From positions 248,001 through 312,000 of IMG/VR virus record IMGVR_UViG_3300029893_000001: DNA of 64,000 bases. One strand, given 5' to 3'. Both the position numbers and the translations under genes were made by a program. The notes below the pieces were generated by a model. The model was given only the letters and a program-made list of their open reading frames with translations. It had not been told where the DNA came from and searched no databases. Below are positions 28,959 through 44,044 of this stretch, piece by piece. Each line of letters opens with the position of its first letter. Within the stretch, counting starts at the first letter, position 1.

Positions 28959-31319
28959 ATGTCATCCATTAAGTTCAACTTCGGCCGAATGCGTACCGCC
29001 AGTCTTCGCAAAAAGGCCCTAGGCCCAGGTGGCTTTGGTGGCTTCGGGGGCTCAAGCGGCTTCGGATTTGGCGGTAGTTCGGGCGGATTTGGCTTTGGTA
29101 GTCCAGGAGGACGCAACACTCACAACAGATTTAATCCTGTCTACGACGACCTATCAGAAGGCTCGATTATCGAGCAATTCATGCCGGTCGACCCACGTCG
29201 ACTGAATAGAATCTGGCGTCGAATCAAGCTACAAGACCCGGTTGCCGGCCCTGCTATCGACCTTTACTCAGAACTCCCGTGGTCCGATTTCCAGCTCATC
29301 GGTATCGAAGACCGGCAGATTGCACAGGTGTATCAAGACGCCCTAAATGCAATCAATCTGACCGCCCACATGCCAGAGATTTCGGCGGAATTCCTTTCGA
29401 TGGGAAAGGTTATAGGTCACCTGCTAATGGACGAGAGCCGTGGGATTTGGGAGCGGATGATCATTCACGATCCTGACTGGATTCGTGTTACCCCAATTCC
29501 TATGCCAGGCTTCCAGCCTAAGCTTGACATCATTCCCACACCGGATATGCGGAACTGGGCTCACTCTCAAGATGAACGGGACGTTGAAGCACAAAGGGAA
29601 GTTCGTGAGCTTGTTTCGATGATCCGAGCGGGTCAGGAGATTCCTCTGCCTCCGGAAAACACGTTCTACATTCCTCGTAGAACTGCCCCTTATGACGTTA
29701 TCGGTGCCAGTGCGTATACGCGCATCATCATGTTTGTGGCGTATGAAAAAGCTCTCGTAAACGCCACAATTGCTGCCAGTCGTAGGCGTGCATCTAGGAT
29801 CCGACATATAACGGCGGGTCTTGATGACGTCTGGGAACCTTCTAAAGAGGAGCTAGACGATCTTTCTGCTCTGTTCATGCAAGCAGATGAAGACCCGGTA
29901 GGAGCTATCGTGGTTACTCGTACTGGTGTGACAGCCAATGAAGTAGGCGGCTCATCACCCCAGGATATCGTCAAAATCTCTGATGAATGGCAGTTCTTGC
30001 TTCAAGGTAAGTTGAATGCACTCGGAGTTAGCGAAGCGTTCCTCACCGGAGAAGCAACGTACAACACGTTAGAGCAGCTAATGAGCGTCTTCTTGGAGAA
30101 GGTGAAGGCGCACCGTAAGTTCTTTGAGCATGCTCTAATCTACGAAAAGCTGTTGAAGCCCTTGGCTCGCCGTCACGGGTTCGTTCATAGGAAGAAGGCT
30201 GAGCTAGACCACCGAATTCGCATTGCTCAGGATGAGAGTGAAAAGCGCTACATTTTGCCTACTCTTGCTTGGGAGAAGTCTCTACGGCCTGTTGCAGACC
30301 GCGACTACCTTGAAATTCTCCAGATGATGGAAGAAAAGGGCATTCCGATCACAAAGCGCACGTGGACTAGCGCTGCGGGCTTCGATCTCGAATCCGAGAT
30401 GGAACAATTCGATGACGATCTAGAGACCACTCGTCAACTAGCTGCCCAGAAAAAGAAGATCACTCAAATCGCCCCCGATGCGGCAGGCGGAGGAATGGGT
30501 GGAGGTCTTGGCGATATGGGTGGCGGCCTCGGAGGAGATCTCGGCGGTCTCGGAGGAGATCTAGGAGGCCTAGGTGGCGGCGGTCTTGGTGATATGGGTG
30601 GCGGTCTTGGTGGAATGGGAGGGGACATGGGGGCCGGTGGTGGAGGCCTCGGGGATATGGGTGGCGCTGGGGGTGCTGGTGCCGGTGCTGGCGGACCTGG
30701 AGGCGGAGGTGCTCTTCAGCTTCCCCAAATCGGAGCATCATTCCGCGGAGCAGCAGCCAGGCATTATACCGAGGACCGAAAGGCTATTGATCTTCTTCGT
30801 TCTCTGCCCATCTGGAATAAGAAGGCAGAGTTTATGGGTGTTCATGTAGATATGGCTGAATTGGCCACTCGTCGTCTACTAGACAATCTTGGCCAACGAC
30901 TAACCAGGAATCTCACAAAAGCTGAGACTAGACGCATCCTAAACACCGGGAACAACAGAAGAGATCAGGTTTTGAGATATATCCTGACGCGAATCGGTGT
31001 TATCCGTAACGCTGATATCAGTAGAACTGTAGCAATGGATATCCAGCGGGAACTTCAAGCCTCACTGAGAGGGAACCCAAGACTGCTTGGGGCTGAACTA
31101 AAAGCAGTGTTGGCTTGCGTGAACTCAAGGGAGATTCAGGCATCACTCGAAGATGCCAAGCGAGACCAAGAATACCGGAACTCCTTCTTCAAGGAAAGTT
31201 CTGCTCCAGAAATGTCAAACGACCTAAAGCAGAGTATCTCTGGTGAGAAACGATTTGTGTCAGACCGAAACCTACTCACTGGTTTTGTTCACGACAAGAA
31301 GATGGTCGAGGGTGAATAA
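28959..31319 (+). CDS. Portal protein with Gly-rich N-terminal and internal segments
   Basis: Lies between TerL and the protease; 'DPVAGPAIDLYSELP', 'ALGVSEAFLTGEATYN' portal-like motifs. Confidence 0.8.
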   Translation: MSSIKFNFGRMRTASLRKKALGPGGFGGFGGSSGFGFGGSSGGFGFGSPGGRNTHNRFNPVYDDLSEGSIIEQFMPVDPRRLNRIWRRIKLQDPVAGPAIDLYSELPWSDFQLIGIEDRQIAQVYQDALNAINLTAHMPEISAEFLSMGKVIGHLLMDESRGIWERMIIHDPDWIRVTPIPMPGFQPKLDIIPTPDMRNWAHSQDERDVEAQREVRELVSMIRAGQEIPLPPENTFYIPRRTAPYDVIGASAYTRIIMFVAYEKALVNATIAASRRRASRIRHITAGLDDVWEPSKEELDDLSALFMQADEDPVGAIVVTRTGVTANEVGGSSPQDIVKISDEWQFLLQGKLNALGVSEAFLTGEATYNTLEQLMSVFLEKVKAHRKFFEHALIYEKLLKPLARRHGFVHRKKAELDHRIRIAQDESEKRYILPTLAWEKSLRPVADRDYLEILQMMEEKGIPITKRTWTSAAGFDLESEMEQFDDDLETTRQLAAQKKKITQIAPDAAGGGMGGGLGDMGGGLGGDLGGLGGDLGGLGGGGLGDMGGGLGGMGGDMGAGGGGLGDMGGAGGAGAGAGGPGGGGALQLPQIGASFRGAAARHYTEDRKAIDLLRSLPIWNKKAEFMGVHVDMAELATRRLLDNLGQRLTRNLTKAETRRILNTGNNRRDQVLRYILTRIGVIRNADISRTVAMDIQRELQASLRGNPRLLGAELKAVLACVNSREIQASLEDAKRDQEYRNSFFKESSAPEMSNDLKQSISGEKRFVSDRNLLTGFVHDKKMVEGE
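30483..30710 (+). repeat. Coding Gly-rich repeat (GGLGDMGG)n in the portal
   Basis: Degenerate ggcggt/ggaggt/gatatg units. Confidence 0.85.
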
Positions 31320-32050
31320 TGCTGAAGCTTGGAGATGCTACCTTTGACACTCGTGTCTTTGAGGGGGTTTCTTGTGAGACCCATCGAGACGTAACCGGTA
31401 AGCTTCGTGTTGCGTCTGAGAACATCCTCAACAAGACCCGCAGCCTTGACATCTCTTGGTTGCCGATGGCTGCAGAGCAATACCAAATTTCGGCAGACAT
31501 CCGCGACTACATTATCAATGAAATCCCGATCGTTACTGTCGGGTGTCCCAATCGTAATCTCGATGAGTTTCCGTATGACGAGGTGACCTCCTTCAATCCA
31601 GAGCTGGGTCGCCTCGTGTACCAAACTTTCATCGGAAAGCCGACGCATATGGATCACGACAATCGTGATCCGCGAAAAGCGAAGGGCGTTCACTTTGATG
31701 CTTCATTGCAGAAGACCGCAGACGGTCGCTACAAAATCGTAGTGCTTGCGGGCTGGGACAGGACCAAGGACCGTGACCTAGCTAATTCGATTCTACGTCG
31801 AGATCGCACCGGATTCTCAATGGGAGCGCTCGTAAGTTACACGCAGTGCAGCTATCCGGGGTGCGGAGCAGTCTCCCCGAACGGCAAGATTGCTTGCCGT
31901 CACCAAGAGTACGGAAGGGGGAAGGGACGAATTCTTGAGGGGCACCTCGTCTATGAACGCTGTTACCGAGTGAACTTCATCGAAACCTCTTCTGTTGCTG
32001 ATCCTGCCGATCATACTGCTCATGATCGATGGGTTAAGCAGTGGACATGA
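31319..32050 (+). CDS. Prohead (capsid maturation) protease
   Basis: 'NRNLDEF', 'FIGKPTHMDHDN' (His), 'GFSMGA' (Ser), 'FIETSSVADPAD' in the HK97/herpes-type protease pattern, with a Zn insert. Confidence 0.82.
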   Translation: MLKLGDATFDTRVFEGVSCETHRDVTGKLRVASENILNKTRSLDISWLPMAAEQYQISADIRDYIINEIPIVTVGCPNRNLDEFPYDEVTSFNPELGRLVYQTFIGKPTHMDHDNRDPRKAKGVHFDASLQKTADGRYKIVVLAGWDRTKDRDLANSILRRDRTGFSMGALVSYTQCSYPGCGAVSPNGKIACRHQEYGRGKGRILEGHLVYERCYRVNFIETSSVADPADHTAHDRWVKQWT

Positions 32051-32078
32051 TCACCGACCTCTCTGACCGATAACTCAG

Positions 32079-33197
32079 ATGTCCCTTTCTCAAAAGACAG
32101 CGTCTCTGGTGTTCAAGGAAGCTGATGAGGCCGCTTCTAGGTTAGCAGATGCTCTGGCTAAAAGGATCGGAGTAACGCCTATCCACGGCCATCGCGTGCC
32201 AAGAGCTGCGAGAGAAGGACATACCGAAGCTCCTATCATTGCTTCGTCAACGATGGGAAGCCACGAAGAACCCGAGCCTTTCTTGGAGATTCTGCACCCA
32301 AATCCAAAGGTTGCCTCCTGGCTTATCGCACAGGCAGAAAAACTTGCTCCCAAATACGGCTTACATCCCGAGTGGGATGATGATTTCTTCGATGGTAGGT
32401 ACCAAAGAGTATCCTTCAGTTGGCAGGGAGCTTTTGGACAGGAAGCGGTATCAGCATCCACTCGACTGGCTTCACCTCAGGCGCTTCGCCATGTCCAAAC
32501 TCAAACAAGTCTTCTCTTGAAGAAGATCAAGTTTGCCAGAACTCGGAGTGAAGTTGCTCTTGATGAATTGAAGTCTTCTGACGATCCTGCAAAACAGGAG
32601 GCGGCGAAGGAACTAGAACAGGTCCTCCCCAATGTGCTGGCGTCTCTTGATCAAGCTGAAGAAATTCTGCGTAGGGTTGGCCCTCTCTCCTCCAGAATTA
32701 ATGCAAACAATTACCAGCAAGTGATGAGCCATATAGACCAAGCCTTGTCGGAAGGCTTGATGGGGTTCAACACGTGGGGCAAGCAGACAGATATCCAGTT
32801 GGGAAATCTGAGGGAAAAACACGAGAAGCTTGCAAAGCAACTTTCCGAACTCGTTCGAGAGAGATTTAAGCAGGCGCTTCGCCAACTGCGAGAAGAAGGG
32901 TTGTCCCCGGATCAGGCAGGGCTAAAGGCCAGCCAATCTCCTGCAATTCAGAAAATGATGCTTCTCTCGCAGAGAACCAAGTCCAAGCTGGAAGCGATCG
33001 ATTTGGTGTTCCACGAGCTGAAATCGCTTTTTGAGACTTCTCAGCCAATTATAGAGAAGCTCAAGTACTTCTATTCTGTACTTGAATCGTCTTTGCAGCC
33101 GAGAAAAACGGCTGCCAAGTTCCAGGCTCAAAAAAGACTACGTCGCGTAGCTAAACGAATCGTCTTACTCGCATATTTACGAAGCAAGTCCTTGTGA
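32079..33197 (+). CDS. Hypothetical (probable internal head) protein
   Basis: Long helical ORF with [KR]xA motifs. Confidence 0.7.
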   Translation: MSLSQKTASLVFKEADEAASRLADALAKRIGVTPIHGHRVPRAAREGHTEAPIIASSTMGSHEEPEPFLEILHPNPKVASWLIAQAEKLAPKYGLHPEWDDDFFDGRYQRVSFSWQGAFGQEAVSASTRLASPQALRHVQTQTSLLLKKIKFARTRSEVALDELKSSDDPAKQEAAKELEQVLPNVLASLDQAEEILRRVGPLSSRINANNYQQVMSHIDQALSEGLMGFNTWGKQTDIQLGNLREKHEKLAKQLSELVRERFKQALRQLREEGLSPDQAGLKASQSPAIQKMMLLSQRTKSKLEAIDLVFHELKSLFETSQPIIEKLKYFYSVLESSLQPRKTAAKFQAQKRLRRVAKRIVLLAYLRSKSL

Positions 33198-33268
33198 CCC
33201 GGATTTGAACGCTGGTGTTCATCTCCCTCACCCCTTGCTCTTGGGCCCAACCGAAAGGTAAAACCAAA

Positions 33269-34234
33269 ATGGCAAAGCACGATGCAGCAGCCTTAAGAGC
33301 AGCTCGCCAGAAGCGCCTCGCGGCACGCCAGGCCGTGACAGCTTCTGAGAGCAAGCAGTCTGAACAAAAGTCTTCCGATGAGCAGCGCACCGCCGCCCCC
33401 GTCACCGCACCTCCTGCTAGTGCGGTTCCGGACAAGATGGCGTGCCCGGTGGTCGATCCCACGATGGTTCCCAAGACCGCAGCAGTTGATCTGCTTCTCT
33501 ACGGAGAGCAGACCGAGAACCCCCACTGGGTGGTTCTTGCTGGTGGTCGCCCGGTTGCCGAGATTCGTCTCGAAGACCAGGAGGAGCCGCAGAAGATCGC
33601 GAAGCTTTTCATCACTGAGAAGTATGCCGAGGGTGTTCGTGAGGCAGCTAAGTCCTTCGACTTTGCTGAGGTATTGGCTGGCGTTCGCGCCCGTCCATAC
33701 GTCGCAGCAGTTGCAGGAAGTGATGCGTTCCAGCGCATCGAGGCTGCTGCGGCAGACAAGGCCAAGGCCGAGCTTCGCAAGGCCAAGGCAGCTCTCCGCG
33801 ACGACGCACTCAATATGCTTAACCTGGTCGTAGTTGCTCAGACCAAGAACTTCATTTCGGAGAACGTGCTCAAGTCAGAGCTGTTCAACCGAATGATTGA
33901 GGCTGGTGTAACTGACCGTCAGGCTGTCGCAATCATTGAGGCTGCTTATCAGGCAAAGGCTCCCGAACACTTCGAGAACTGCTTCAAGCAGGCCTTCAAG
34001 TGGATGGACCTCCAGCCGGAGGCTCTCGCGGAGCTGGAAGAGCAGATCAAGGGCCTTTCTCATCGCACTCCCGTTGTTGCGGAGTCCGAGGAAATTCCCT
34101 CCGCCAGGTCTGCTTCTAGCCACATGCACAACATTCCTCTGGAGACTCGCTCTGCGTCGTACTCGGAAGAGTCCGACGACAAGAGTCATCTCCGCGAGGC
34201 GTTGGGCTTCCGTCGGCGGATGCATAGTCGATAA
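33269..34234 (+). CDS. Putative scaffold protein
   Basis: Helical and Ala-rich; lies between the protease and the decoration/capsid genes. Confidence 0.55.
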   Translation: MAKHDAAALRAARQKRLAARQAVTASESKQSEQKSSDEQRTAAPVTAPPASAVPDKMACPVVDPTMVPKTAAVDLLLYGEQTENPHWVVLAGGRPVAEIRLEDQEEPQKIAKLFITEKYAEGVREAAKSFDFAEVLAGVRARPYVAAVAGSDAFQRIEAAAADKAKAELRKAKAALRDDALNMLNLVVVAQTKNFISENVLKSELFNRMIEAGVTDRQAVAIIEAAYQAKAPEHFENCFKQAFKWMDLQPEALAELEEQIKGLSHRTPVVAESEEIPSARSASSHMHNIPLETRSASYSEESDDKSHLREALGFRRRMHSR

Positions 34235-34256
34235 CCTCTAAGAGGGAGAGTAAAAC

Positions 34257-34964
34257 ATGGCATTCGATCTTACACGTTCCTATTTCAATGACATCCGTGA
34301 GCGAGCGGTTGCCCCCGGTGCCACAATCACCGAGGAAGGCCAGCTACTTATGTATGTCGACGCAGGTGACGGCACCCTTGCGGTGCAGCCTTCTGCGGGT
34401 GCTGCTACTGACCGTGTCGCTGGTTTCGCAATCACTGATGCGCTCAAGTACGTTACCCAGACTGTCGTTGAGAGTCTGACCGTTCCCGCAGGCGGCGGCA
34501 CAGTCTCTCTTCGTCAGAACAACCTGACGGCTAACGATACGCGAGCAGTCGCGTCTACTACCGGTGTTCTTACCGAGGTAGGCGGCGCCCCCGCGGCTGG
34601 TCAGTTCCAGATGAACAACGCGGACGGTACCATCACGTTCAACGCTGCTGAAGCAGGACAGACCGTGACAGTTACCTATCGCTACACCCCAACTCTTGAT
34701 GAGGCTCTTGCCACTTGGCACGAGCGTTCCATCAACAACCGCGCTCAGGACTACTTCAGCACCGTTGGCGTTGGTTGCATGGAGGGTGAGATCTTTACCA
34801 CGATGTACGACACAACGCAGGCCTACGCAGTAGGCAATGTCGTGAACTCTGGTGCAGGCGGCCAAGTGACGACGGCTGCTGGTGGCGTGGCCATCGGCAT
34901 CGTTTCCCAGGTCCCGTCTGTGGCAGATGGTCGTCTTGGAGTGAAGTTCTCCGGTCTCTCCTGA
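34257..34964 (+). CDS. Putative head decoration/cement protein
   Basis: Small-residue beta-rich protein upstream of MCP with an inserted beta-domain. Confidence 0.65.
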   Translation: MAFDLTRSYFNDIRERAVAPGATITEEGQLLMYVDAGDGTLAVQPSAGAATDRVAGFAITDALKYVTQTVVESLTVPAGGGTVSLRQNNLTANDTRAVASTTGVLTEVGGAPAAGQFQMNNADGTITFNAAEAGQTVTVTYRYTPTLDEALATWHERSINNRAQDYFSTVGVGCMEGEIFTTMYDTTQAYAVGNVVNSGAGGQVTTAAGGVAIGIVSQVPSVADGRLGVKFSGLS

Positions 34965-34991
34965 ACCTAAGCGGTAACCAACCCGCAAAAC

Positions 34992-35026
34992 CAAAAGGCC
35001 GAGTTGGAAATCAACTCGGCCTTTTG
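34992..35026 (+). terminator. Intrinsic terminator
   Basis: CAAAAGGCCGAGTTG-gaaat-CAACTCGGCCTTTTG. Confidence 0.85.
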
Positions 35027-35038
35027 TATTTTCTATGC

Positions 35039-35335
35039 ATGACAATCACAGTCCCTGCCAATGTTCAGCATCCACCAGCAGTCAATGGCTTTGACCAGCT
35101 CAATTACCCATCAGTTGGGATTCAGCAACAAAGCTTGTCAGCAACAACGACCGTTGATGCAGAAGAACTGTCTGTCACGGCTACCGTCTCCTATTCCGAT
35201 GGGACCTCGGAAGCAGATATAGCCGTCGTTCCAGAGCTTCGTCCCTCTCACAATGCTGCACTACATGTAGTCGGACAGGCTTTCCTGGAGGCAATTCCCG
35301 GGTTAACGGAGAATAGAATTCGACGGTTCAGATGA
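35039..35335 (+). CDS. Small hypothetical protein
   Basis: ATG 35039. Confidence 0.55.
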   Translation: MTITVPANVQHPPAVNGFDQLNYPSVGIQQQSLSATTTVDAEELSVTATVSYSDGTSEADIAVVPELRPSHNAALHVVGQAFLEAIPGLTENRIRRFR

Positions 35336-35547
35336 TTTTTCTTCGACCACGGAGAAAGACTTCTTAAAGTCATTCTCTTATGTGATTCATGTTCGAGAAA
35401 GTCTTACCCGGAATACATGCCGGGACTCAAGAAGCTAGTATGAGATTGCCTTTAGGAGACAGGGCTCTCCTTCCAAACCAAGCTCGAAAAAGACTGAAGT
35501 AGAGAGTTTCCAACAACCAACCCCTTTTCTCTGAAGTGAGAATAACA

Positions 35548-36678
35548 ATGGCAAACCCGTACGCTTCTGGTCCCGGTGTGAAGGTAATGCGGCAGGCTCC
35601 GGACGTTCCCGCAACCTCTGAGGATGGTCTTCGAGGTGGTGTTCGTCTGGCTGGCGGCCGTACTCAGCTTTCTGCTGGACCCGCATTTGGTCGCAATGGT
35701 GAGCTAAACGCTTCTTCGAAGCGCGAGCTTATGCAGGTTATCGGCAACGTTCTGCATCAGGCTCGGGAGAATGTTGTAACCCAGCGCCATGCTTCGGCTG
35801 AAGAGTCGATGCAGCGTCTTGCCCACCTTCGTGAGGCCTACTACGACAAGTCTGGATCCAAGTTCCAGGTTCTCGGAGAGGTCATCTCGGAGGAGATCTG
35901 GGAGACGTTGGGCCGTGAAGGCTTCTCTCGTCGACTCCTTTCGGTTATGCCCCTTGCAAAGGGTCAGACCGGCCGAGTCAAGGTTCGTCGTAAGGACGTT
36001 GTTGCGTTCCAGATCACGACTGACGTCAAGGTCCAGGAGCAGCGCATTCGTCAGCCTTGGGTATACCCGCCCGAGTTCTACCTTGCGGCACACATCCTTA
36101 TCGAGGACAAGGAAATCGAGCAGGCCTCAACGGACATTCTCGACGAGAAGTTCCAGGATGGTCTAGAGGCAATCCTTCGTCGTGAAGACCTCATCACCCG
36201 CGCTCTTTTGAACCGCGCAGCAACCACGTTCAACGACTTGGTGCTCTTCACGACATTCAACCCATCTGTTCTTACCACGCTTCGTACTCAGGTTAACCGC
36301 TGGGGTACGCCGGCTGCAACGATGGTAATCGCCTGGGATATCTGGGATGACATCATCGCCGACGCCGACTTCGTGGCTTGGTGGGATCAGGTCCACAAGC
36401 ATGAGTTGATCCTTGAGGGTCGCCTTGGCTCCATGCTTGGAATGGAGATCATCACGGATGGTTACCGCTACGAAACCTTGCAGGTTCTTCAGCCTGGTGA
36501 GGTTTACGTGACGGCCTCCCCCGTGACGCTCGGAACCATCACGCAGCGCAAGGAGCTGGACTCTCGTGCCATTGACCAGTACAACATGGGCCGCCCGGCT
36601 CGTGGCTGGTTCATGGAGCAGATCCAGGGCCAGGTAATCGTGAATGGTCGTGCCGTCAACCGTGGCGTCCGCGTCTAA
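35548..36678 (+). CDS. Major capsid protein (HK97 fold, probable)
   Basis: Size and position after protease/scaffold/decoration; 'REGFSRRLL', 'PPEF', 'AILRRED' E-loop/spine-helix pattern; followed by a terminator. Confidence 0.82.
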   Translation: MANPYASGPGVKVMRQAPDVPATSEDGLRGGVRLAGGRTQLSAGPAFGRNGELNASSKRELMQVIGNVLHQARENVVTQRHASAEESMQRLAHLREAYYDKSGSKFQVLGEVISEEIWETLGREGFSRRLLSVMPLAKGQTGRVKVRRKDVVAFQITTDVKVQEQRIRQPWVYPPEFYLAAHILIEDKEIEQASTDILDEKFQDGLEAILRREDLITRALLNRAATTFNDLVLFTTFNPSVLTTLRTQVNRWGTPAATMVIAWDIWDDIIADADFVAWWDQVHKHELILEGRLGSMLGMEIITDGYRYETLQVLQPGEVYVTASPVTLGTITQRKELDSRAIDQYNMGRPARGWFMEQIQGQVIVNGRAVNRGVRV

Positions 36679-36684
36679 TCTCAC

Positions 36685-36754
36685 TTGAGGAAGTAAATTC
36701 CTCAACCCGCAGCGGGAGTGTGGAGTTCGTCTCTACACTCCCGCTTCGTATTTA
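36685..36754 (+). terminator. Double hairpin/terminator after MCP
   Basis: TTGAGGAA-gtaaa-TTCCTCAA, then AGCGGGAGTGTGGAG-ttcgt-CTCTACACTCCCGCT-TCGTATTT. Confidence 0.7.
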
Positions 36755-36777: not shown

Positions 36778-37047
36778 ATGCGTCCGGAGCTAAAGACAAG
36801 GATTCTTCGGGTGGCAGAGGCAATGAAAGTCTTCCGCTACTATGAAGATCTCGTAAAGAATATGGCTCAGTTCTCAAACGCGTGGAATGCCACCGCAGAA
36901 GAGATGAAAAAGGGTCTTGAGACACGTGACGTCGATCTACTAGCGCGTGCTATTCGAGAGAATCGTAAGCAGGCTCAGCGCCTTAGTTACGTTCTTGAAC
37001 GTCACGAGAGGCTTGTCTCGAACCTTGGAGCTAAAAATGAGACCTGA
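36778..37047 (+). CDS. Hypothetical head-associated protein
   Basis: AAGGAG RBS; N-terminus similar to that of the next gene. Confidence 0.7.
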   Translation: MRPELKTRILRVAEAMKVFRYYEDLVKNMAQFSNAWNATAEEMKKGLETRDVDLLARAIRENRKQAQRLSYVLERHERLVSNLGAKNET

Positions 37048-37396
37048 CCTTGAGAAGCGGTTCTTGAAGGTGGCCCATAATCTGGATCGCCTCGAACAGC
37101 TTCGGAATTTGGTTGAAGACATTGAACAGACCTCACCGAGGTCGCTAATTGCTTCTGCCGCAGTAGCGGGCGCAGAGTTCTTAGCGGCTGCAACAGGCCA
37201 TACTGATGATGTAGCAGTGATTCATCGAGTTTACGAAGAGATTTTCGCTGCGATAGAATCTAGTGATGCAGTTAACGAGATGTTCTCGGCAAACAAGATT
37301 GCTTCTGCCGAAAAGGCCGATCGTTGTGCTCAGGCCGTCTCTTACCTGCAAAGGCTCCGTAGAAATCTGTCTCGAATGGGAGGCGAGCATGCATGA
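37037..37396 (+). CDS. Hypothetical head-associated protein
   Basis: Start MRPDLEK (37037), GGAG RBS. Confidence 0.7.
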   Translation: MRPDLEKRFLKVAHNLDRLEQLRNLVEDIEQTSPRSLIASAAVAGAEFLAAATGHTDDVAVIHRVYEEIFAAIESSDAVNEMFSANKIASAEKADRCAQAVSYLQRLRRNLSRMGGEHA

Positions 37397-38051
37397 AATT
37401 GTTGAACGCCTCATGGTCCTTGCCGCGCCAAAAAAGAAGGTTAAGCGCAAGTACTCCAAGGACGTTGAGAATGCATATGATGAATTGCTAGTTCACTTTG
37501 TTGAAAGTAGCGACTACACAAAGCGAGACAGAGCTTTTCGATTGATGATGCGTATTCGGAAGGCTTTAGAATCAGAGGGGTACGCCTTCAGAGAAAAGGT
37601 GATGTCAACCCCTCCAGCTACGCAACCGAAGCCAACGAGCCCCGTTTCCAAGTCCAAGCATCTCGTGTGTATGGGAGGGCTATGCACGTTGCTCAAAACC
37701 AAACCCCCGACAGGCCTGGACGCACACGCCACAGTACGCCTGATGGAATATCTGAGAAGCAAGCAGTGCTACCAGTTTTCTATCAAGCCCTCCGACCCTG
37801 AAGCAGTACGCAAAAGTGGTGTTAACGTCTCGCTTCCGAAGCCTCTGACGTGGGCAAAACTTGAGAATCACGGGCTGACTAGAGAGCCCATAGTTACCAA
37901 TGATGGTCGGACACTCATGGAGGAGTTCTCCATTGATGGCATCTGTGCGTACACCCTTGACAGACAGACCTTCTACGTGTCTAACGCAGGAATGTGCCGT
38001 CGATGGATGGATGGCCTAGACCGGATTGCAGACCAGGCCCTTAACAGGTGA
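37389..38051 (+). CDS. Hypothetical protein
   Basis: Start MHEIVE (37389), GGAGG RBS. Confidence 0.7.
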   Translation: MHEIVERLMVLAAPKKKVKRKYSKDVENAYDELLVHFVESSDYTKRDRAFRLMMRIRKALESEGYAFREKVMSTPPATQPKPTSPVSKSKHLVCMGGLCTLLKTKPPTGLDAHATVRLMEYLRSKQCYQFSIKPSDPEAVRKSGVNVSLPKPLTWAKLENHGLTREPIVTNDGRTLMEEFSIDGICAYTLDRQTFYVSNAGMCRRWMDGLDRIADQALNR

Positions 38052-38054
38052 TTT

Positions 38055-39488
38055 ATGGGCTTCCGGTTTTTATCTGCAGACAAGGTTACAGACCCCAAGT
38101 CTGCTGAACGAGTTCTGACGAAGTATCGAAATCGAGAGACAACTATGGCTCTCGATTCTCAGTCTTTTGACGGAACAGTTTTGAACGTAAAGGCCTCAGG
38201 AGGAACCCTCCGAATCGAATTCACTTGGTCGCATGATCGAGACCAAGGACCTTCGGAAATCGGTCACATTCAGCGTACTGCTGCAGCCAAAATCGGCTCT
38301 ATGGTTCGGTTCAAGGTCGGTACGGATGAATTCATTGGTCTACTTTCTGGTATGACAGAACTTCCAAAAGGCGCAACGACAGAGCGATACTTGGACTCCC
38401 CGTTCGTAATGACGTTTGCCTTCTCAGCACAAGACCAGAAGCCTATTATTGCGGACTTCGAAGAGAGTGGCATCATAGGCGTTCCCGTGCCGGCAAATAT
38501 CGTAGAACAGTTGCCAATTTCTGAGGACCTTCCGTACGATCCTCATATCACAGTCTGCTTTTTCCCTAAGCTCTCTCCCGAAGACGTCGAAAAGATATTG
38601 CCTATCGCAGCAGAAGCTGCTGACATTGTGGGAAGTTTCGACGTAATGATTGACGGTGGTACCGTATTCCCCAACCAGCAAGAGGACGGAACGTATCCAC
38701 ACGTTGCCAAGATTCTGAGCGAGGGCCTCAAAGATTACCACGATCTGGTGGTAGAGATGTGTGAGCACTACTTTCCAGGGAAAGTCGACACCACATTTGC
38801 TCTCAAGAACTATAAGCCACATTTGACGTTGTCGTATAACCACGACCCGTCTCCTCGTTCCGTACCCAAATCTCTCGCATGGAACGTAGACCATCTTACA
38901 CTCAATTTAGGCAAAACACGTAAGTTCCCAATCCCTCTCACAGAAGGTTCGCTTCGAGAAGGGGGCAGCGTACCAAAGCCATATCTCCAGTTTGGGGAGA
39001 TCCAAATCCCAATTCACGTCGTTGGAATTGGAAACAGGGAAGGGAGCATGCGGCTCCGTCTTAAAGAGCCAAAACAGGCACGCCGTTTCGATGAGTTGGA
39101 AGGCAAGACGGTGATGTTGGTAACTAAGAATGCAGACCAAGAACTGGAAATCAACCAAGTTATTGGCGCTGGTCCTGACGAATTTCAACTCTTCTATCGT
39201 CCAGTTGTCGTCTACATGCCAAAGTCGGCTGCCACGACACTGCGTTTTGTGAGCGCTGTTGCCCGAGATCGAGGCCTCACAAACATTTCTAATCGACTTT
39301 CAAAGTTCTTGGATTTCGACTCCTCTAAGTCTGAAGAAGAGGAAGAGCCAGAGGATAAAGAGGCCCTGGGCCCGGGGTTCGAGGGCACTGATGAACACAT
39401 TGTTACGTATGTGAAATCTCCCCAAACCCAGGTTATTGTTGAGGAGCCTAAGTTTACTCGCAAGTTGCCGCTTCACGAAAGAATTTGA
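38055..39488 (+). CDS. Multidomain protein with central 2H phosphoesterase (LigT/Acb1-like) domain
   Basis: Two HxT motifs, 'DPHITVCF' and 'KPHLTLSY', at 2H-family spacing. Confidence 0.8.
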   Translation: MGFRFLSADKVTDPKSAERVLTKYRNRETTMALDSQSFDGTVLNVKASGGTLRIEFTWSHDRDQGPSEIGHIQRTAAAKIGSMVRFKVGTDEFIGLLSGMTELPKGATTERYLDSPFVMTFAFSAQDQKPIIADFEESGIIGVPVPANIVEQLPISEDLPYDPHITVCFFPKLSPEDVEKILPIAAEAADIVGSFDVMIDGGTVFPNQQEDGTYPHVAKILSEGLKDYHDLVVEMCEHYFPGKVDTTFALKNYKPHLTLSYNHDPSPRSVPKSLAWNVDHLTLNLGKTRKFPIPLTEGSLREGGSVPKPYLQFGEIQIPIHVVGIGNREGSMRLRLKEPKQARRFDELEGKTVMLVTKNADQELEINQVIGAGPDEFQLFYRPVVVYMPKSAATTLRFVSAVARDRGLTNISNRLSKFLDFDSSKSEEEEEPEDKEALGPGFEGTDEHIVTYVKSPQTQVIVEEPKFTRKLPLHERI

Positions 39489-39544
39489 GATCGCGTTGAA
39501 GCATCATTTTGGGAGAAACACAACGGAAAGTGGGTACGGAAGCA

Positions 39545-40036
39545 ATGGCAAACCTAAACTCAGAAGAAAAGCGGCTACTCACGGCTGCTAAGCGTCTACG
39601 TCAACTCGTAAAGGCTGACGTAGAGAAAACGGCACATCCTGCCCTAATGGCTCTAGTCCGAGGTCTTGGTCCAGCCCTTTCTCGGTTGGGGCCAAAGCTT
39701 ATGCAGGTCATCAAGGCCATCCCACCGGATGCCTGGGGTCAGATTGCGCAGAACGTAGCTAGCATGCTCACGCAGATGGCGCAGGCTCAAGATGGGGCCA
39801 AGTCTGCCTCGACAGAGTACACAAAGGCCAGGACACTTAAAACAATCGTTGCCGTAGAAAAGAGCCTGCGTCGCGCCCGCATTAAGAACGCAAAGAGCAT
39901 CGCCACGCAGCTAGTAATGGCTTCTGTGCAAGCAGTTGCGGATCACAAGAAGACTCCTAATCCAGAGTTGGTCAAGGCGGTCCAAATGGTAAATGATGCT
40001 CGGGCTGAAATCGCATTGCTTCGTGAGTTTGTCTGA
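39545..40036 (+). CDS. Hypothetical (probable internal head) protein
   Basis: Helical, with [KR]xA motifs. Confidence 0.7.
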   Translation: MANLNSEEKRLLTAAKRLRQLVKADVEKTAHPALMALVRGLGPALSRLGPKLMQVIKAIPPDAWGQIAQNVASMLTQMAQAQDGAKSASTEYTKARTLKTIVAVEKSLRRARIKNAKSIATQLVMASVQAVADHKKTPNPELVKAVQMVNDARAEIALLREFV

Positions 40037-40863
40037 TGGAAGTCCTTCCTCTAGATCAGCAGAAAAAGGCGGTCCTGTACGCCCCTAAGGACCTTCTGTG
40101 GAAGATCGCAGAGGAAGAGGACGCCTGGCTAAAGCTATTGGGTATTCTTCCGGAGGACTACTATGCGCAGTTCCTCGGGAGGCTTCGACTCATGGGAGTC
40201 GAGGACCCGAATCAGATGAAGAACATGGCAAAGGTGTACGTCCAGAACAAGGTTCGACTGGACCACCTGCAAGAGGCGTTGGCAGCGGCTTGGAATCCCA
40301 ATGACTTAGAAGAAGGGACTTCATGGCTGAAGGAGAAAGGCTTTCTTAATAGACCCCTTGCGCCATTGTCATTACAAGCAGAGACCGCGCAGATCAAAGA
40401 AGTAATGGCAGAAGCTGCGGCTATGCCACTAGTAACCAGGCTGAGGCTCGCGAGGGCAGCGAAGGGGACCCGGCCTAAGGTCGGAAATCCTCCGGACGGG
40501 GCCAGTCCAGAGGCCGCCAAGTGCTGGAATCGTGTTTTGCGAGACCCCAAACGCAGGAAAGTGATCTTCAAGCCAAAGGGCCTTGCAGACCAATGGGCAC
40601 TGGCGCATAAGTTTTGGCTGAAGGAATGCGCCCGAGATGGCGTTCCCGCGTACAAGAGTCCTGCCGCATCATCGTCAATGCATGCGCAGAATTCTCTGAA
40701 GCGCTCTCTTCACGAGATGCACAATAGCCTCTGCTATGATGGCTACACAATGTCTCGACCGGCTTCTAGGCTTCTCAAGAAGCTTTACGACCAACTGGTA
40801 CGGGATGGATATGATGTTGGTCCATGGAATTCAATTCGTCCCAAGACTCCCAAGGGAATCTAA
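40036..40863 (+). CDS. Hypothetical protein
   Basis: Coupled; C-domain paralogous to 43348-43614. Confidence 0.7.
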   Translation: MEVLPLDQQKKAVLYAPKDLLWKIAEEEDAWLKLLGILPEDYYAQFLGRLRLMGVEDPNQMKNMAKVYVQNKVRLDHLQEALAAAWNPNDLEEGTSWLKEKGFLNRPLAPLSLQAETAQIKEVMAEAAAMPLVTRLRLARAAKGTRPKVGNPPDGASPEAAKCWNRVLRDPKRRKVIFKPKGLADQWALAHKFWLKECARDGVPAYKSPAASSSMHAQNSLKRSLHEMHNSLCYDGYTMSRPASRLLKKLYDQLVRDGYDVGPWNSIRPKTPKGI

Positions 40864-42500
40864 TGTCTGCTAAGACTCTATTAGAGCAGCGTGCGATTTT
40901 CCTCCAGAAACTCGCCTATGAGATTCTGACGAATCCAAACATTCGTCTAGCAACTGTTGCCAACCTTGTTGGGGATCCTACGCTTTTCGACAAGGACCTT
41001 AGTTCTGTACTTTCGATTTTGTTCGCCCATGACAACTTAAAGTCAGAGAACGTCTCCGCTGCAGAGCAGCCCGTCAAGATTCTTGAACAGATCTACCAGG
41101 ACTTAGAAGTTCGAGGGTTCAAGCTACCCAACTTCAAAAGACGCTATGAATGGGTTAAGAGTGTTACTGGAGGGTCATTTAGAAATGACTCAAAGAATTT
41201 TGACGGAGGCGAAGCACGTGCGCTAGATCGGCCTTTGCGCCGACTACGAGAGAGATTCTACGAGCTTCGAATGCACGACGACGGGCATGTGCAGGACAAT
41301 CTAGGCCGTGCTGTCTCGAAGCACACAGGAGCGGAGCTAACAGCTCTGGTTGAGCAACTCATTGCTTCCATCAAGAAGCTTGAAACCGAGGGCCAGGCCT
41401 ACTCTGTTGGCGGCGATGATTCCCGTGCAGGAAAGGGTCGTAACGAGTTCTTGGACAAGCGCTACGATGAAGTAGCAGCTCTTATCAACAAGTCTGTCGG
41501 TACCTCCGCCGAAGGTCCGGTCATTACGATCTATCACCTTCAAGGCGAAGCGGTTGATAGCGAGCGCTGGTATGCCGTTGCGGAGAAAGACGTAATGCCG
41601 TTGTCCAACGCAGTTGTGTCTGCACGGCCTAAATGGCGACTGGAGGACAACTCCAAGTATGAGTATATTTCCACCCTCATTTCTTCGCCGTCATCAATCC
41701 AAGTCAAGGTTGTCTTCCCTGACGACAGCCTTAGCGAGGCACAAGAATTGGTTGCGAGAGTGGAAGAAAAGGCGAAGGGACAGATTTCGTCCGTATGGTC
41801 GGGTAACAAAGTCACCCTAAGCAGTCAGCGCAAGGACCTACTAGAGAAGGTTGCTGATTTGTTAGCGGACCGCACTAACGGGACTCGTGGATTGCTGAGA
41901 GGAGCGCGTAGCCTCGAACAGTTTGAGGCAGAGAGCAAACTTCTCAATGAAATCTCGCAGCCTAGCAAGGAAGGCGGTCCTATTGTCAGGCTCGTAAAAC
42001 TGCCCTTCACCCCTGATCAAATCGATGATGCGTTTCCTTCCGTTGAGATTCGGGAAGACGAACACATCGGTAAACATATCTCGAAGATTTCATTGGAACT
42101 CATCCGAAAGTCTAGGTTCTCTGGGTTTGTTGATTTCGACGACAAGTACAGGATGATGATTCTGTGGGCCAACGCCCCGTCAGACGACCAGAAGGACGCA
42201 GAAGGGAACACGTTCCGCGACCATCTTGTGGAAATCCTGAAGGACCACAAGAAGGACTTTGCTGGAATTATGGGCCAAGTTCCGGAGATCGTTCGCACTA
42301 AAACTGGAGCAGCGCTGTACTTCCCCCGTCCTGCCAGCATCCCCCGCGTCGTGAAGAATAGAGCAGGAATTGAAGATGCCATTGAATCTGTGAATGCAGA
42401 CATCGAAGCTATGGAGCAGCATACACGGATTGAGCGGGGCTTTAATAGGAGCATCGACCAGGATGAGCTGCCCCTTACGCTGGAGGAGGTTGGCTCGTGA
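40863..42500 (+). CDS. Hypothetical protein
   Basis: TAATG coupling. Confidence 0.75.
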   Translation: MSAKTLLEQRAIFLQKLAYEILTNPNIRLATVANLVGDPTLFDKDLSSVLSILFAHDNLKSENVSAAEQPVKILEQIYQDLEVRGFKLPNFKRRYEWVKSVTGGSFRNDSKNFDGGEARALDRPLRRLRERFYELRMHDDGHVQDNLGRAVSKHTGAELTALVEQLIASIKKLETEGQAYSVGGDDSRAGKGRNEFLDKRYDEVAALINKSVGTSAEGPVITIYHLQGEAVDSERWYAVAEKDVMPLSNAVVSARPKWRLEDNSKYEYISTLISSPSSIQVKVVFPDDSLSEAQELVARVEEKAKGQISSVWSGNKVTLSSQRKDLLEKVADLLADRTNGTRGLLRGARSLEQFEAESKLLNEISQPSKEGGPIVRLVKLPFTPDQIDDAFPSVEIREDEHIGKHISKISLELIRKSRFSGFVDFDDKYRMMILWANAPSDDQKDAEGNTFRDHLVEILKDHKKDFAGIMGQVPEIVRTKTGAALYFPRPASIPRVVKNRAGIEDAIESVNADIEAMEQHTRIERGFNRSIDQDELPLTLEEVGS

Positions 42501-42910: not shown

Positions 42911-43351
42911 TTGGCCGTCGAACCTAAACAACTGATTCTTGACGGAAAAGCCGAGTACATCGAAGACGGTGACACGGTTCTTGTGGTGGTCTACGTCATG
43001 GACCCCCAACTTGAGTTGGGTTTCCCCGGCCACGTAAAGTCAGGGACATGTAAGCTTCTCTACCGAAACCAAGTAGTTAGAACAATCGAGTTCGATCGAA
43101 GGTTCGGTAACGGAGAAGGCGCAGATGGGGATTTCATCTTCCAATTTCTTCACCCTCCGTTCAATCGAGATATGAAGATTTCAGTTGAAGTAGAGGCTCC
43201 TATATCTCAGCAGGGAGCCGGGGTCCTGAAGAAAACAATTCCTGTCACACAAGCTGAGATTCCGTTCATCCCACTGCAGCAGCAATTAGACACAGTGTCG
43301 AATGCAAATGGAGAACTCAGAAGCAGACGACGTATGGAGGAGGAGATATGA
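42911..43351 (+). CDS. Hypothetical protein
   Basis: Operon context. Confidence 0.65.
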   Translation: MAVEPKQLILDGKAEYIEDGDTVLVVVYVMDPQLELGFPGHVKSGTCKLLYRNQVVRTIEFDRRFGNGEGADGDFIFQFLHPPFNRDMKISVEVEAPISQQGAGVLKKTIPVTQAEIPFIPLQQQLDTVSNANGELRSRRRMEEEI

Positions 43352-44036: not shown

Positions 44037-44044
44037 GGCCCCAA

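What the first reader, a model, noticed from the sequence alone, without database searches (positions are those of the whole stretch)
38055..39488. 2H phosphoesterase (Acb1/LigT fold) inside a probable head-packaged protein
Seen: paired HxT motifs (PHITV ~38541, PHLTL ~38817) in the middle of a 477-aa protein in the post-capsid operon, flanked by [KR]xA motifs (QRTAAA, PKSAAT). Known: the phage 2H enzyme Acb1 (T4 gp57B) degrades cyclic-nucleotide signals of CBASS; other 2H enzymes process 2',3'-cyclic phosphate RNA ends. Inference: an anti-defence or RNA-repair enzyme delivered with the DNA, possibly freed by the prohead protease.
Basis: partly seen in the sequence, partly recalled or inferred. 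Interest (0 to 1): 0.62.

Follow-up and report, generated by a model that had tools for sequence, protein, structure and literature searches.

The report
Megaphage virion-operon LigT-type 2H phosphoesterase
A 477-residue protein encoded three genes after the capsid gene of an uncultured 392-kb phage does contain a LigT-type (not Acb1-type) 2H phosphoesterase, set in a conserved scaffold of its own, so it is probably an enzyme carried in the virus particle, but neither that nor its substrate has been shown.

Summary
Pfam LigT_PEase and 2_5_RNA_ligase2 score above their cut-offs. The fold matches D. radiodurans CPDase and E. coli LigT (Z 16-17). Acb1 is below its cut-off and a weaker fold match (Z 9.4).

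All four catalytic residues are invariant in 26 homologues, so an active enzyme is likely.

New here:
- The 2H domain (aa 138-296) lies between two small beta-domains. Their best structural matches, all modest, are phage tail-tube, hub and Hcp proteins.
- The protein ends in a disordered acidic linker and a 44-residue tail. The tail is the best conserved part (83% mean identity against about 55% for the N-domain and 2H domain).
- Remote relatives (20-27% identity) keep the N-domain, the 2H domain and the tail motif together.
- The gene keeps a fixed place after the capsid gene in about 390-425 kb uncultured phages. No cultured phage has it.

Not supported: the proposed [KR]xA cleavage sites are not conserved, and one lies inside a folded helix.

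Packaging into the virion is inferred from gene order and from known fusions of 2H domains to head proteins. It is a new variant of a known kind.

The parts
38055..39488 (+). Whole gene, 477 aa (P0001): N-domain, 2H phosphoesterase, middle beta-domain, helical hairpin, acidic linker, conserved tail
   Evidence: ORF listing and translation. 25 full-length homologues. AlphaFold model with mean pLDDT 76.9.
38082..38429 (+). N-terminal beta-domain (aa 10-125). Its best structural matches are phage tail-tube, hub, Dit and Hcp proteins. It always occurs together with the 2H domain.
   Evidence: Folded alone: pLDDT 84.5, pTM 0.77. VIA top match is a Mu baseplate chain at Z 7.5; most of the top 50 rows are tail-tube, hub or Hcp chains and a few are PilZ or split-barrel proteins; nothing reaches Z 8. 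Foldseek finds nothing significant. The ESM Atlas model matches GPD, CIS_tube, tail-tube and GpU clusters at TM 0.43-0.52. Nine of the ten remote relatives scanned carry a 2H domain directly after this domain.
38466..38942 (+). 2H phosphoesterase domain (aa 138-296), LigT/ThpR-like
   Evidence: Pfam PF02834 and PF13563 above their cut-offs. VIA: drCPDase Z 17.1, E. coli LigT Z 16.1, P. horikoshii 2'-5' ligase Z 15.8, rotavirus VP3 Z 13.6, Acb1 Z 9.4. Foldseek E 8.5e-7 to drCPDase. The alignment profile hits the Pyrococcus LigT-like chains at E about 1e-3.
38544..38552 (+). First catalytic HxT motif (H164-I-T166)
   Evidence: H164 and T166 are invariant in 26 close and 13 mixed close and distant homologues.
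38820..38828 (+). Second catalytic HxT motif (H256-L-T258)
   Evidence: H256 and T258 are invariant in 26 homologues. In the mixed alignment of 13 (10 of them distant relatives), H is kept in all 12 that cover the site and T is replaced once each by A, S and C.
38979..39218 (+). Middle beta-domain (aa 309-388), Hcp/Dit-like by fold. Missing in two close homologues and replaced by a helical region in most distant ones.
   Evidence: VIA: Hcp2-Hcp3 Z 7.0, phage p2 Dit Z 7.0, Pa193 baseplate Z 6.8, also YcgR-N/PilZ Z 6.4-6.5. Absent from P0025 and P0026. One distant relative, P0033, keeps a region that aligns with it; the others have a different, helical middle.
39219..39353 (+). Helical hairpin (aa 389-420) and disordered acidic linker (aa 421-433)
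   Evidence: Secondary structure and pLDDT below 50 from aa 423. Alignment.
39354..39485 (+). Conserved C-terminal tail (aa 434-477), the best conserved part of the protein; predicted disordered; proposed docking peptide
   Evidence: Mean identity 83% against 54-55% for the N-domain and 2H domain. The motif is kept in relatives of 20-27% identity. It was found in no other protein of this genome, in none of 262-835 aa in the word-indexed library, and in IMG/VR only in five full-length relatives.
36711..36745 (+). Terminator-like hairpin after the capsid gene; the 2H gene lies in the transcription unit downstream of it
   Evidence: 15-bp stem with 9 G-C pairs and a T-rich tail. No further + strand terminator-like site up to 41000.
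36778..38051 (+). Three small upstream genes of the same unit (about 89, 119 and 220 aa; likely starts at 36778, 37037 and 37389), syntenic in all related loci
   Evidence: ORFs. The same order and sizes in L001, L008, L009 and L010. No family hit.
39509..42500 (+). Downstream genes of the conserved block (175, 275 and 545-558 aa), function unknown. No sequence evidence that any of them is a sheath or tube protein.
   Evidence: No PHROG, Pfam or PDB-profile hit. No profile similarity between the 545-aa, 136-aa, 146-aa and 275-aa proteins and the PaBG sheath, tube or neighbouring proteins they were compared with. The block is conserved even in the distant locus L017.
28959..36678 (+). Head module upstream: portal, prohead protease, two coiled-coil scaffold-like proteins, a virion structural protein and the major capsid protein
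   Evidence: PHROG hits: portal 1.3e-102, protease 3.5e-55, virion structural protein 1.7e-22, major head protein 5e-60.

Best explanation
The gene encodes a catalytically competent 2H phosphoesterase of the LigT/ThpR (2',3'-cyclic phosphodiesterase) type. It belongs to a protein family found only in large uncultured phages.

The family's fixed parts are:
- an N-terminal beta-domain that resembles tail-tube and Hcp proteins;
- the 2H domain;
- after a disordered acidic linker, a highly conserved peptide of about 44 residues.

The gene is transcribed with the late head genes, downstream of the capsid gene's terminator.

Most likely reading (inferred, not shown): it is a low-copy virion protein. 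The conserved tail docks it onto a conserved head or neck partner during assembly, and the protein enters the cell with the DNA. There the enzyme would open 2',3'-cyclic phosphate ends or 2'-5'/cyclic oligonucleotide linkages made by host defence RNases or signalling cyclases, before any phage gene is expressed.

- **Shown:** domain identity, conserved catalytic residues, architecture, synteny.
- **Inferred:** virion incorporation, the docking role of the tail, delivery, substrate.
For: **Enzyme.**
- Pfam LigT_PEase and 2_5_RNA_ligase2 score above their cut-offs.
- Fold Z is 15-17 to drCPDase, E. coli LigT, P. horikoshii 2'-5' ligase and B. subtilis YjcG.
- Foldseek E is 8.5e-7.
- H164, T166, H256 and T258 are invariant in 26 homologues, and the two histidines are kept wherever distant relatives cover the sites.

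**Late head operon.**
- Terminase, portal, protease and capsid genes lie upstream on the same strand.
- A terminator-like hairpin follows the capsid gene, with none before 41000.
- The gaps to the neighbouring genes are 3 nt and 20 nt.

**Fixed position.**
- The gene order is the same in every close relative's locus examined.
- Those contigs include ones of 388 kb and 424 kb, both rated 100% complete.
- The downstream block is kept in the distant locus L017.
- A 787-aa relative lies 5 kb downstream of a portal of the same PHROG family.

**Family-specific scaffold.**
- The N-domain profile finds remote relatives. Nine of the ten scanned carry a 2H domain right behind it.
- Most of them keep the tail motif.
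- The tail is 83% identical on average and predicted disordered, which suits a peptide that folds on a conserved partner.

**Precedent for 2H domains in head proteins.**
- Fusions to MuF or portal domains (PMC5512222).
- A cluster of fusions to the Peptidase_S78 prohead protease.
- 2H-fold matches in proteins named 'capsid morphogenesis' or 'structural' in actinophages.
- Giant phage heads are known to carry many ejected proteins (abstracts of PMC7411985 and PMC10052503).

**Not linked to RNA repair genes.** It is the only 2H gene in the genome. The three RNA ligase genes and the kinase lie about 100-185 kb away.
Against: - There is no direct evidence that the protein is in virions. The phage is uncultured and no cultured phage has a full-length relative.
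- P0001 contains no recognised head-targeting domain such as MuF, portal or protease.
- No conserved protease site was found.
- The flanking domains match tail-tube and hub proteins best, which fits a neck or tail location at least as well as the inside of the head.
- The neighbouring genes have no assignable function, so 'structural operon' downstream of the capsid gene rests on position only.
- The substrate is unknown. The nearest characterised enzymes heal RNA ends, which is also compatible with a role inside the infected cell late in infection.
Confidence: 0.5

Rival explanations
1. It is a ring-forming component of the neck or tail (a tube-fold protein such as a terminator, tube initiator or hub). 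The 2H domain would be an outward-facing insertion, in the way Ig-like domains decorate tail-tube proteins. It would stay on the particle and not be ejected.
For: The N-domain and the middle domain match tail-tube, hub, Dit and Hcp chains best: Mu baseplate Z 7.5, diffocin, Pa193, phi812, SPP1 Dit, lambda gpV, Hcp. ESM Atlas matches are GPD, CIS_tube, tail-tube and GpU clusters. Two tube-like domains around an insert recall gp27/VgrG and the duplicated T5 tube protein (my own knowledge). The tail contains strand-like stretches that could add to a neighbour's sheet.
Against: All Z values are below 8 and Foldseek is not significant. PilZ and split-barrel proteins score nearly as well. The middle domain is missing in P0025 and P0026 and in most distant relatives. 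There is no sequence relation to the neighbouring small proteins or to PaBG tube and sheath proteins. A Baseplate_J gene lies about 58 kb away in a separate minus-strand cluster. An active site kept invariant is hard to explain for a mere decoration.
Confidence: 0.2
2. It is not a virion protein. It is a late-expressed enzyme acting inside the infected cell, healing 2',3'-cyclic phosphate RNA ends (for example tRNAs cut by host anticodon nucleases) for the phage's own RNA ligases.
For: The closest enzymes are RNA 2',3'-cyclic phosphodiesterases. The genome has three PF09414 RNA ligase genes and an AAA_33 kinase, and this is its only 2H gene. 2H enzymes are named as end-healing partners of RNA ligases in jumbo phages (PMC7824862).
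Against: The gene is about 100-185 kb from the ligase and kinase genes and sits in the head operon in every genome examined. Neither RtcB nor the Tpt1 2'-phosphotransferase is encoded. Late expression is poorly timed for countering an early host attack. The conserved disordered tail and the N-domain have no obvious role in a soluble repair enzyme.
Confidence: 0.17
3. It is an Acb1-type anti-CBASS nuclease, as the reader first suggested, which specifically degrades cyclic di- and trinucleotide signals.
For: It has the same superfamily and catalytic chemistry. Acb1 from phage FBB1 aligns at Z 9.4 and a phage BCSR5 phosphodiesterase at Z 10.1. There is a weak Pfam Acb1 hit around the second motif.
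Against: Acb1 Pfam scores 15 bits against a cut-off of 27 and covers only 19 residues. LigT-type enzymes fit far better (Z 15-17). Acb1 proteins are small, about 140-160 aa in the solved and predicted examples matched here, and, as far as I know, stand-alone.
Confidence: 0.1
4. The 2H domain is an inactive structural or binding module.
For: In a few distant relatives the second motif reads HxA, HxS or HxC.
Against: All four catalytic residues and the neighbouring prolines are invariant in the 26 close homologues, although the domain as a whole is only 54% identical.
Confidence: 0.03

Closest known systems
Bacterial and archaeal LigT/ThpR RNA 2',3'-cyclic phosphodiesterases (E. coli LigT, D. 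radiodurans CPDase, Pyrococcus PH0099)
   Same: Two HxT motifs, the same fold (Z 15.8-17.1, 148-159 residues aligned), and Pfam LigT_PEase above its cut-off.
   Different: Those are stand-alone proteins of about 170-185 aa. This domain scores far below the ThpR equivalog model (18 bits against 65.7). It is embedded between two extra domains with a conserved tail, in a phage head operon.
Phage anti-CBASS nuclease Acb1 (T4 gp57B family, PF23474)
   Same: 2H superfamily, phage-encoded, metal-independent chemistry on cyclic phosphodiesters.
   Different: Below the family cut-off (15 bits against 27) and a weaker fold match (Z 9.4). Acb1 proteins are small (about 140-160 aa in the examples matched here) and, as far as I know, are not encoded in the structural operon.
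2H domains of polyvalent proteins fused to MuF or portal domains, and fusions to the Peptidase_S78 prohead protease (mostly actinophages and prophages)
   Same: A 2H enzyme physically tied to the head assembly machinery. Iyer et al. proposed that such domains act as RNases or degrade defence-related nucleotides (PMC5512222). S78 fusions and matches in proteins named structural or capsid morphogenesis were seen here.
   Different: P0001 has no MuF, portal or protease domain. Its carrier parts are a tube-like beta-domain and a C-terminal peptide specific to this family. Its hosts are about 390-425 kb uncultured phages.
Rotavirus VP3 C-terminal 2',5'-phosphodiesterase and coronavirus ns2
   Same: A 2H domain of a virus that destroys an immune second messenger. 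VP3 aligns at Z 13.6 and MHV ns2 at Z 12.8. That VP3 is part of the virus core is my own knowledge.
   Different: These are eukaryotic RNA viruses with no sequence relation beyond the fold. The substrate here is unknown.
T6SS 'evolved' Hcp/VgrG effectors and tail-tube proteins with extra domains (T5 pb6, lambda gpV)
   Same: A tube-fold domain joined to a further functional domain. Fold matches to Hcp, VgrG, Dit and gpV are Z 4.7-7.5.
   Different: The fold match is modest and ring formation was not tested. There is no sequence similarity. The comparison rests partly on my own knowledge of those systems.

Membership tests
2H phosphoesterase superfamily (LigT-like clade) | Two H-x-T/S motifs about 90 residues apart, each in a hydrophobic strand | tested here: met
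   PHITV at aa 163-167 and PHLTL at aa 255-259. Invariant in 26 homologues.
2H phosphoesterase superfamily (LigT-like clade) | Profile match above the curated cut-off | tested here: met
   PF02834 scores 33.6 against 23.3 and PF13563 scores 32.8 against 27.
2H phosphoesterase superfamily (LigT-like clade) | Bilobed alpha+beta 2H fold | tested here: met
   VIA Z 17.1 (rmsd 3.0, 159 aligned) to 5h7f and Z 16.1 to 4qak. Foldseek E 8.5e-7.
2H phosphoesterase superfamily (LigT-like clade) | Cyclic phosphodiesterase or 2'-5' phosphodiesterase activity | not testable with these tools
   Needs an enzyme assay.
ThpR/LigT equivalog (TIGR02258) | Score above the equivalog cut-off | tested here: not met
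   18 bits against 65.7.
Acb1 anti-CBASS nuclease (PF23474) | Profile match above the gathering score | tested here: not met
   15 bits against 27, with only aa 247-265 matched.
Acb1 anti-CBASS nuclease (PF23474) | Closest structural neighbour is Acb1 | tested here: not met
   Acb1 7t27 gives Z 9.4, ranked 19th behind LigT, CPDase, VP3, Usb1 and AKAP18.
Acb1 anti-CBASS nuclease (PF23474) | Cleaves cyclic di- and trinucleotide signals and protects phage from CBASS | not testable with these tools
   Needs biochemical and phage-challenge assays.
Head-packaged polyvalent or MuF-type effector proteins | Fusion to a MuF, portal or prohead-protease domain | tested here: not met
   Pfam, PHROGs and NCBIfam find no such domain in P0001.
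Head-packaged polyvalent or MuF-type effector proteins | Encoded within the head morphogenesis gene cluster | tested here: met
Head-packaged polyvalent or MuF-type effector proteins | Present in virions and delivered to the host | not testable with these tools
   No cultured relative.
Tail-tube / Hcp / hub fold superfamily (flanking domains) | Clear structural match to tube-fold proteins | tested here: inconclusive
   The N-domain folded alone has a top Z of 7.5. Most of the top 50 rows are tube, hub or Hcp chains, but nothing reaches Z 8 and Foldseek E is at least 0.016. The middle domain reaches Z 7.0, with PilZ and flavin-reductase barrels close behind.
Tail-tube / Hcp / hub fold superfamily (flanking domains) | Forms hexameric or pseudo-hexameric rings | not tested
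PilZ cyclic-di-GMP receptor (alternative for the flanking barrels) | RxxxR and D/NxSxxG binding motifs | tested here: not met
   The sequence and alignment show no conserved motif of that form or spacing. The motif definition is from my own knowledge.
Prohead-protease substrate | A conserved cleavage motif shared with other head proteins | tested here: not met
   The [KR]xA sites at aa 74 and 390 are kept in 11 and 12 of 26 homologues. The exact [KR][TS]AA form is absent from the orthologues in L001, L008 and L009, whereas the site in the scaffold-like 339-aa protein is conserved.

The most novel reading that the evidence does not exclude
The tube-fold N-domain is a true Hcp/tube-like carrier that places a 2H enzyme in or at the DNA conduit. 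The enzyme would then be the first thing to reach the cytoplasm. That would make it a phage counterpart of the 'evolved Hcp/VgrG' effectors of type VI secretion, loaded through a conserved C-terminal docking peptide, and a delivery route distinct from the known head-internal MuF, portal or protease fusions.
Probability: 0.12. Interest if true: 0.8.

Novelty: new variant of a known kind. Interest (0 to 1): 0.5.

Why it matters
Enzymes pre-loaded in virions can disarm host immunity before any phage gene is expressed. 2H enzymes can destroy both cyclic-oligonucleotide alarm signals and the cyclic-phosphate ends left by defence RNases.

This family would add a second, unrelated way of coupling a 2H enzyme to the particle: a tube-like domain plus a conserved docking peptide, instead of a MuF, portal or protease fusion. 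It occurs in a clade of very large subsurface and aquatic phages about which almost nothing is known.

The 44-residue tail, if it is a packaging signal, is directly testable. It could also serve as a tag for loading cargo into capsids of this type.

If the protein turns out to be a soluble repair enzyme, the finding is ordinary.

Tried and rejected
1. **Shared packaging or cleavage signal.**
   - The tail profile finds no other protein in the 392-kb genome.
   - A word search restricted to aa 396-477 finds only the same family.
   - An IMG/VR scan with tail patterns finds only five full-length relatives.
2. **Portal N-terminus.** 'KKALGPGGFGG' resembles the tail's 'KEALGPGFEG', and A.GPG occurs only six times in the genome. 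However, three related genomes keep the tail motif and lack the portal motif. I treat this as coincidence within a Gly-rich stretch.
3. **[KR][TS]AA as a protease site.** It is rare genome-wide (16 occurrences), and 5 of them are in three head-operon proteins. It is conserved only in the 339-aa scaffold-like protein, not in the 2H orthologues.
4. **PaBG gp077.** It is the positional counterpart in the nearest cultured relative, but it is not homologous.
5. **Naming the neighbours.**
   - No PHROG, Pfam or PDB-profile hit for the 275-aa, 545-aa and 136-aa proteins, among others.
   - The Atlas has no model of the 545-aa protein.
   - There is no profile similarity to the PaBG sheath or tube.
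   - No Pfam sheath, CIS tube, GPD or gp25 match was found anywhere in the genome.
6. **Internal duplication, or relation to neighbours.** The N-domain and middle domain show no sequence relation to each other or to the neighbouring small proteins.
7. **A swappable carrier.** A search restricted to the N-domain found only close family members. Of the ten remote N-domain relatives scanned, nine carry the 2H domain; the tenth (211 aa) may be a fragment. The scaffold is not a general carrier.
8. **Giant Ig-repeat proteins.** They hit the N-domain profile through many weak stretches. I judge these hits spurious.
9. **Cultured relatives.** tblastn of P0001 and three distant members against 50,697 phage records gave only weak 2H-domain hits.
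12. **Expression.** No RNA run holds the gene.
Full report
**Observation.**
- The window has an ORF at 38055-39488 on the + strand, 477 aa.
- Pfam gives LigT_PEase 33.6 bits (cut-off 23.3) and 2_5_RNA_ligase2 32.8 bits (cut-off 27).
- Acb1 reaches only 15 bits (cut-off 27), over 19 residues.
- PHROGs gives a weak 'RNA ligase' family hit.
- The ThpR equivalog model of NCBIfam scores far below its cut-off.
- So the 2H domain is real. It is of the LigT kind, and it is divergent.

**Genome and context.**
- The window is bases 248001-312000 of a single 392,328-bp IMG/VR virus record, 53% G+C, rated 100% complete.
- Its DNA is held by subsurface and rock metagenome runs.
- Upstream on the same strand lie the large terminase, portal, prohead protease, a virion structural protein and the major capsid protein.
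- The capsid protein is about 34% identical to those of the jumbo myoviruses PaBG, BCSR5, BcepSauron and phiRSL1.
- The capsid gene is bracketed by two strong terminator-like hairpins. Nothing of that kind follows on the + strand up to 41000.
- The 2H gene is therefore in the unit downstream of the capsid gene, 3 nt after the preceding gene.
- The proteins encoded downstream, up to a 2813-aa ORF, hit no PHROG family, and only chance-level Pfam matches far below the cut-offs.
- A Baseplate_J gene lies at 227.8 kb in a long minus-strand cluster.
- The interval 240-248 kb encodes a sigma factor, SSB, UvsX and SbcD.
- No sheath, tube or hub family was detectable anywhere in the genome.
- The 545-, 136-, 146- and 275-aa proteins show no profile similarity to the PaBG sheath, tube or neighbouring proteins.
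- Whether the genes after the capsid gene are head-internal, neck or tail proteins stays open.

**The family.**
- A word-indexed search found 25 homologues of 411-570 aa, 42-70% identical. All have the same layout, and they lie on contigs of up to 424 kb.
- IMG/VR holds five, two of them on records of 388 and 424 kb rated complete.
- In every close relative's locus read, the order is the same: capsid gene, three small genes, the 2H gene, then a block of about twelve genes ending in a protein of 2000-2800 aa.
- Between the window and the 424-kb phage the capsid protein is 86% identical and the 2H protein 45%.
- No cultured phage encodes a full-length member.

**Architecture.** The AlphaFold model has a mean pLDDT of 76.9 but a pTM of 0.41. 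The domains are confident and their mutual arrangement is not. The parts are:
- an N-domain, aa 10-125;
- the 2H domain, aa 138-296;
- a middle beta-domain, aa 309-388;
- a helical hairpin, aa 389-420;
- a disordered acidic linker;
- a tail, aa 434-477.

**The 2H domain by structure.**

| Solved chain | Z |
|---|---|
| D. radiodurans CPDase | 17.1 |
| E. coli LigT | 16.1 |
| P. horikoshii 2'-5' ligase | 15.8 |
| B. subtilis YjcG | 15.0 |
| Rotavirus VP3 | 13.6 |
| Phage BCSR5 phosphodiesterase | 10.1 |
| Acb1 (phage FBB1) | 9.4 |

- Foldseek agrees.
- A profile of the family hits the Pyrococcus LigT-like chains at E about 1e-3.
- H164, T166, H256 and T258 and the prolines before them are invariant in 26 sequences, although the domain is only 54% identical on average.

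**The flanking domains.**
- The middle domain matches an Hcp heterohexamer chain and the phage p2 Dit at Z 7.0. Other baseplate, VgrG and Mu gp44 chains follow. YcgR-N/PilZ and flavin-reductase barrels are close behind.
- The N-domain was folded alone on a 40-sequence alignment (pLDDT 84.5, pTM 0.77). Its best match is a Mu baseplate chain at Z 7.5.
- The next matches are chains from diffocin, Pa193, phi812, phiCD508, Milano, SPP1 Dit, 80alpha, P1, Hcp, lambda gpV and other tube proteins. Most of the top 50 rows are of this kind, with a few PilZ-type rows.
- Nothing reaches Z 8, and Foldseek is not significant.
- The ESM Atlas's own model of the N-domain matches GPD, CIS_tube, tail-tube and GpU clusters at TM 0.43-0.52.
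- I read this as a tube-like fold that is moderately supported, not proven.
- I see no PilZ binding motifs.
- The middle domain is absent from two close homologues. In most distant ones it is replaced by a helical stretch. So a gp27-like pair of tube domains is not a fixed feature of the family.

**The N-domain, 2H domain and tail belong together.**
- An exhaustive profile search with the N-domain alone found remote relatives of 211-787 aa.
- Ten were scanned. Nine carry a 2H domain directly behind the N-domain, and the 211-aa one does not.
- Aligned, most of them keep a recognisable tail motif at 20-27% overall identity. In two of them about 300 further residues follow it.
- One such relative lies 5 kb downstream of a portal of the same PHROG family.
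- Another keeps the downstream gene block.
- Within the close family the tail is 83% identical on average, and it is predicted disordered.
- It occurs in no other protein of this genome. Among proteins of 262-835 aa in the large library it is found only in this family.
- A conserved, disordered terminal peptide behind an acidic linker is what one expects of a peptide that docks on a conserved partner. The partner is unknown.

**The proposed cleavage sites.**
- The loose motif [KR]xA occurs seven times against about three expected, and the two named sites are kept in 11 and 12 of 26 homologues.
- The stricter [KR][TS]AA is rare in the genome (16 in about 120,000 residues). Five of the 16 lie in the 372-aa and 339-aa scaffold-like proteins and in P0001.
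- That is suggestive, but only the site in the 339-aa protein is conserved in orthologues. The 2H orthologues in three loci have none.
- R74 sits in a well-folded helix.
- Release by the protease at these sites is not supported. Processing elsewhere, for instance in the linkers, cannot be excluded.

**Function.**
- This is the only 2H gene of the genome.
- Three RNA ligase genes and a kinase exist, but about 100-185 kb away.
- RtcB and Tpt1 are absent.
- Iyer et al. noted that 2H domains of polyvalent proteins are fused to MuF or portal domains and never associate with RNA ligases. They proposed an RNase role or the degradation of defence nucleotides (PMC5512222).
- The same group names 2H enzymes as end-healing partners of ligases in jumbo phages (PMC7824862).
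- Structure searches here also found 2H domains fused to the S78 prohead protease, and 2H-fold matches in actinophage proteins named capsid morphogenesis or structural.
- Giant phage heads are known to carry many ejected proteins, and several head proteins are cut by the prohead protease (abstracts of PMC7411985 and PMC10052503).
- In PaBG several virion proteins are processed (PMC7412058).
- By position and by these precedents, I rate a virion-borne enzyme as the most likely reading (about 0.5). A neck or tail ring component comes next (0.2), then a soluble late repair enzyme (0.17).

**Verdict.**
- It is not an Acb1 family member, and the cleavage motifs do not hold.
- It is a new variant of a known kind: a 2H enzyme coupled to the particle-building genes, here through a scaffold of its own.
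- The ring test by complex prediction could not be run.

Noticed in passing
window 34992-35026 and 36711-36745: Two strong terminator-like hairpins (16 and 15 bp stems, with T-rich tails) bracket the major capsid gene. This suggests the capsid gene is expressed at a much higher level than the genes downstream.
   Followed up: partly
window 28959-31319 (portal); L026/L027 in the 240-kb IMG/VR record: The portal has two Gly-rich low-complexity stretches, at about aa 20-50 and aa 505-590. In one relative the portal frame is 1240 aa, with an insert of about 450 aa between query residues 364 and 367. This may be an intein.
   Followed up: no
window 32079-33197 and 33215-34234: Two coiled-coil, scaffold-like proteins lie between the protease and the capsid gene. 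The 339-aa one carries an 'RTAAP' site that is conserved in orthologues of two other loci, a candidate prohead-protease site.
   Followed up: partly
window 48869-57310 and 45414-48209: A 2813-aa protein rich in acidic residues and lysine, and a 931-aa protein with a Pro-rich tract. Neither hits any family. Both are conserved in the related loci, and the 931-aa protein also in a distant locus.
   Followed up: partly
window 44033-44422: A 129-aa protein within the conserved block has an N-terminal hydrophobic (membrane-like) helix followed by a charged helical region.
   Followed up: no
homologues P0007, P0013, P0025/P0026 (alignment A1): Variants of the family: a 38-residue Cys-rich insert between the N-domain and the 2H domain (P0007), an extension of about 95 residues after the tail (P0013), and loss of the middle domain (P0025, P0026).
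   Followed up: no
loci of P0011 and P0026 (gene just after the 2H gene): The variable gene directly downstream of the 2H gene carries a ChaB domain in some relatives. In the window, aa 138-223 of the 275-aa protein resemble the L001 counterpart of the 88-aa protein encoded at 43348-43614.
   Followed up: no
G000 about 99.8, 139.6 and 147.1 kb; 387.7 kb: Three PF09414 RNA ligase genes and an AAA_33 kinase lie outside the window. There is no RtcB and no Tpt1.
   Followed up: partly
proteins P0030, P0031, P0035-P0037 and others: The N-domain profile gives summed weak hits, through many stretches, to giant proteins. Those scanned contain Ig-like repeats (IG_AIR9, Big_2). These are probably repeat or composition artefacts, but that is not proven.
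   Followed up: partly
G000 227764-228195 (-), cluster about 181-232 kb: The only recognisable tail gene (Baseplate_J) sits in a long minus-strand cluster of large ORFs, separate from the head operon. No sheath or tube was detectable by Pfam.
   Followed up: partly
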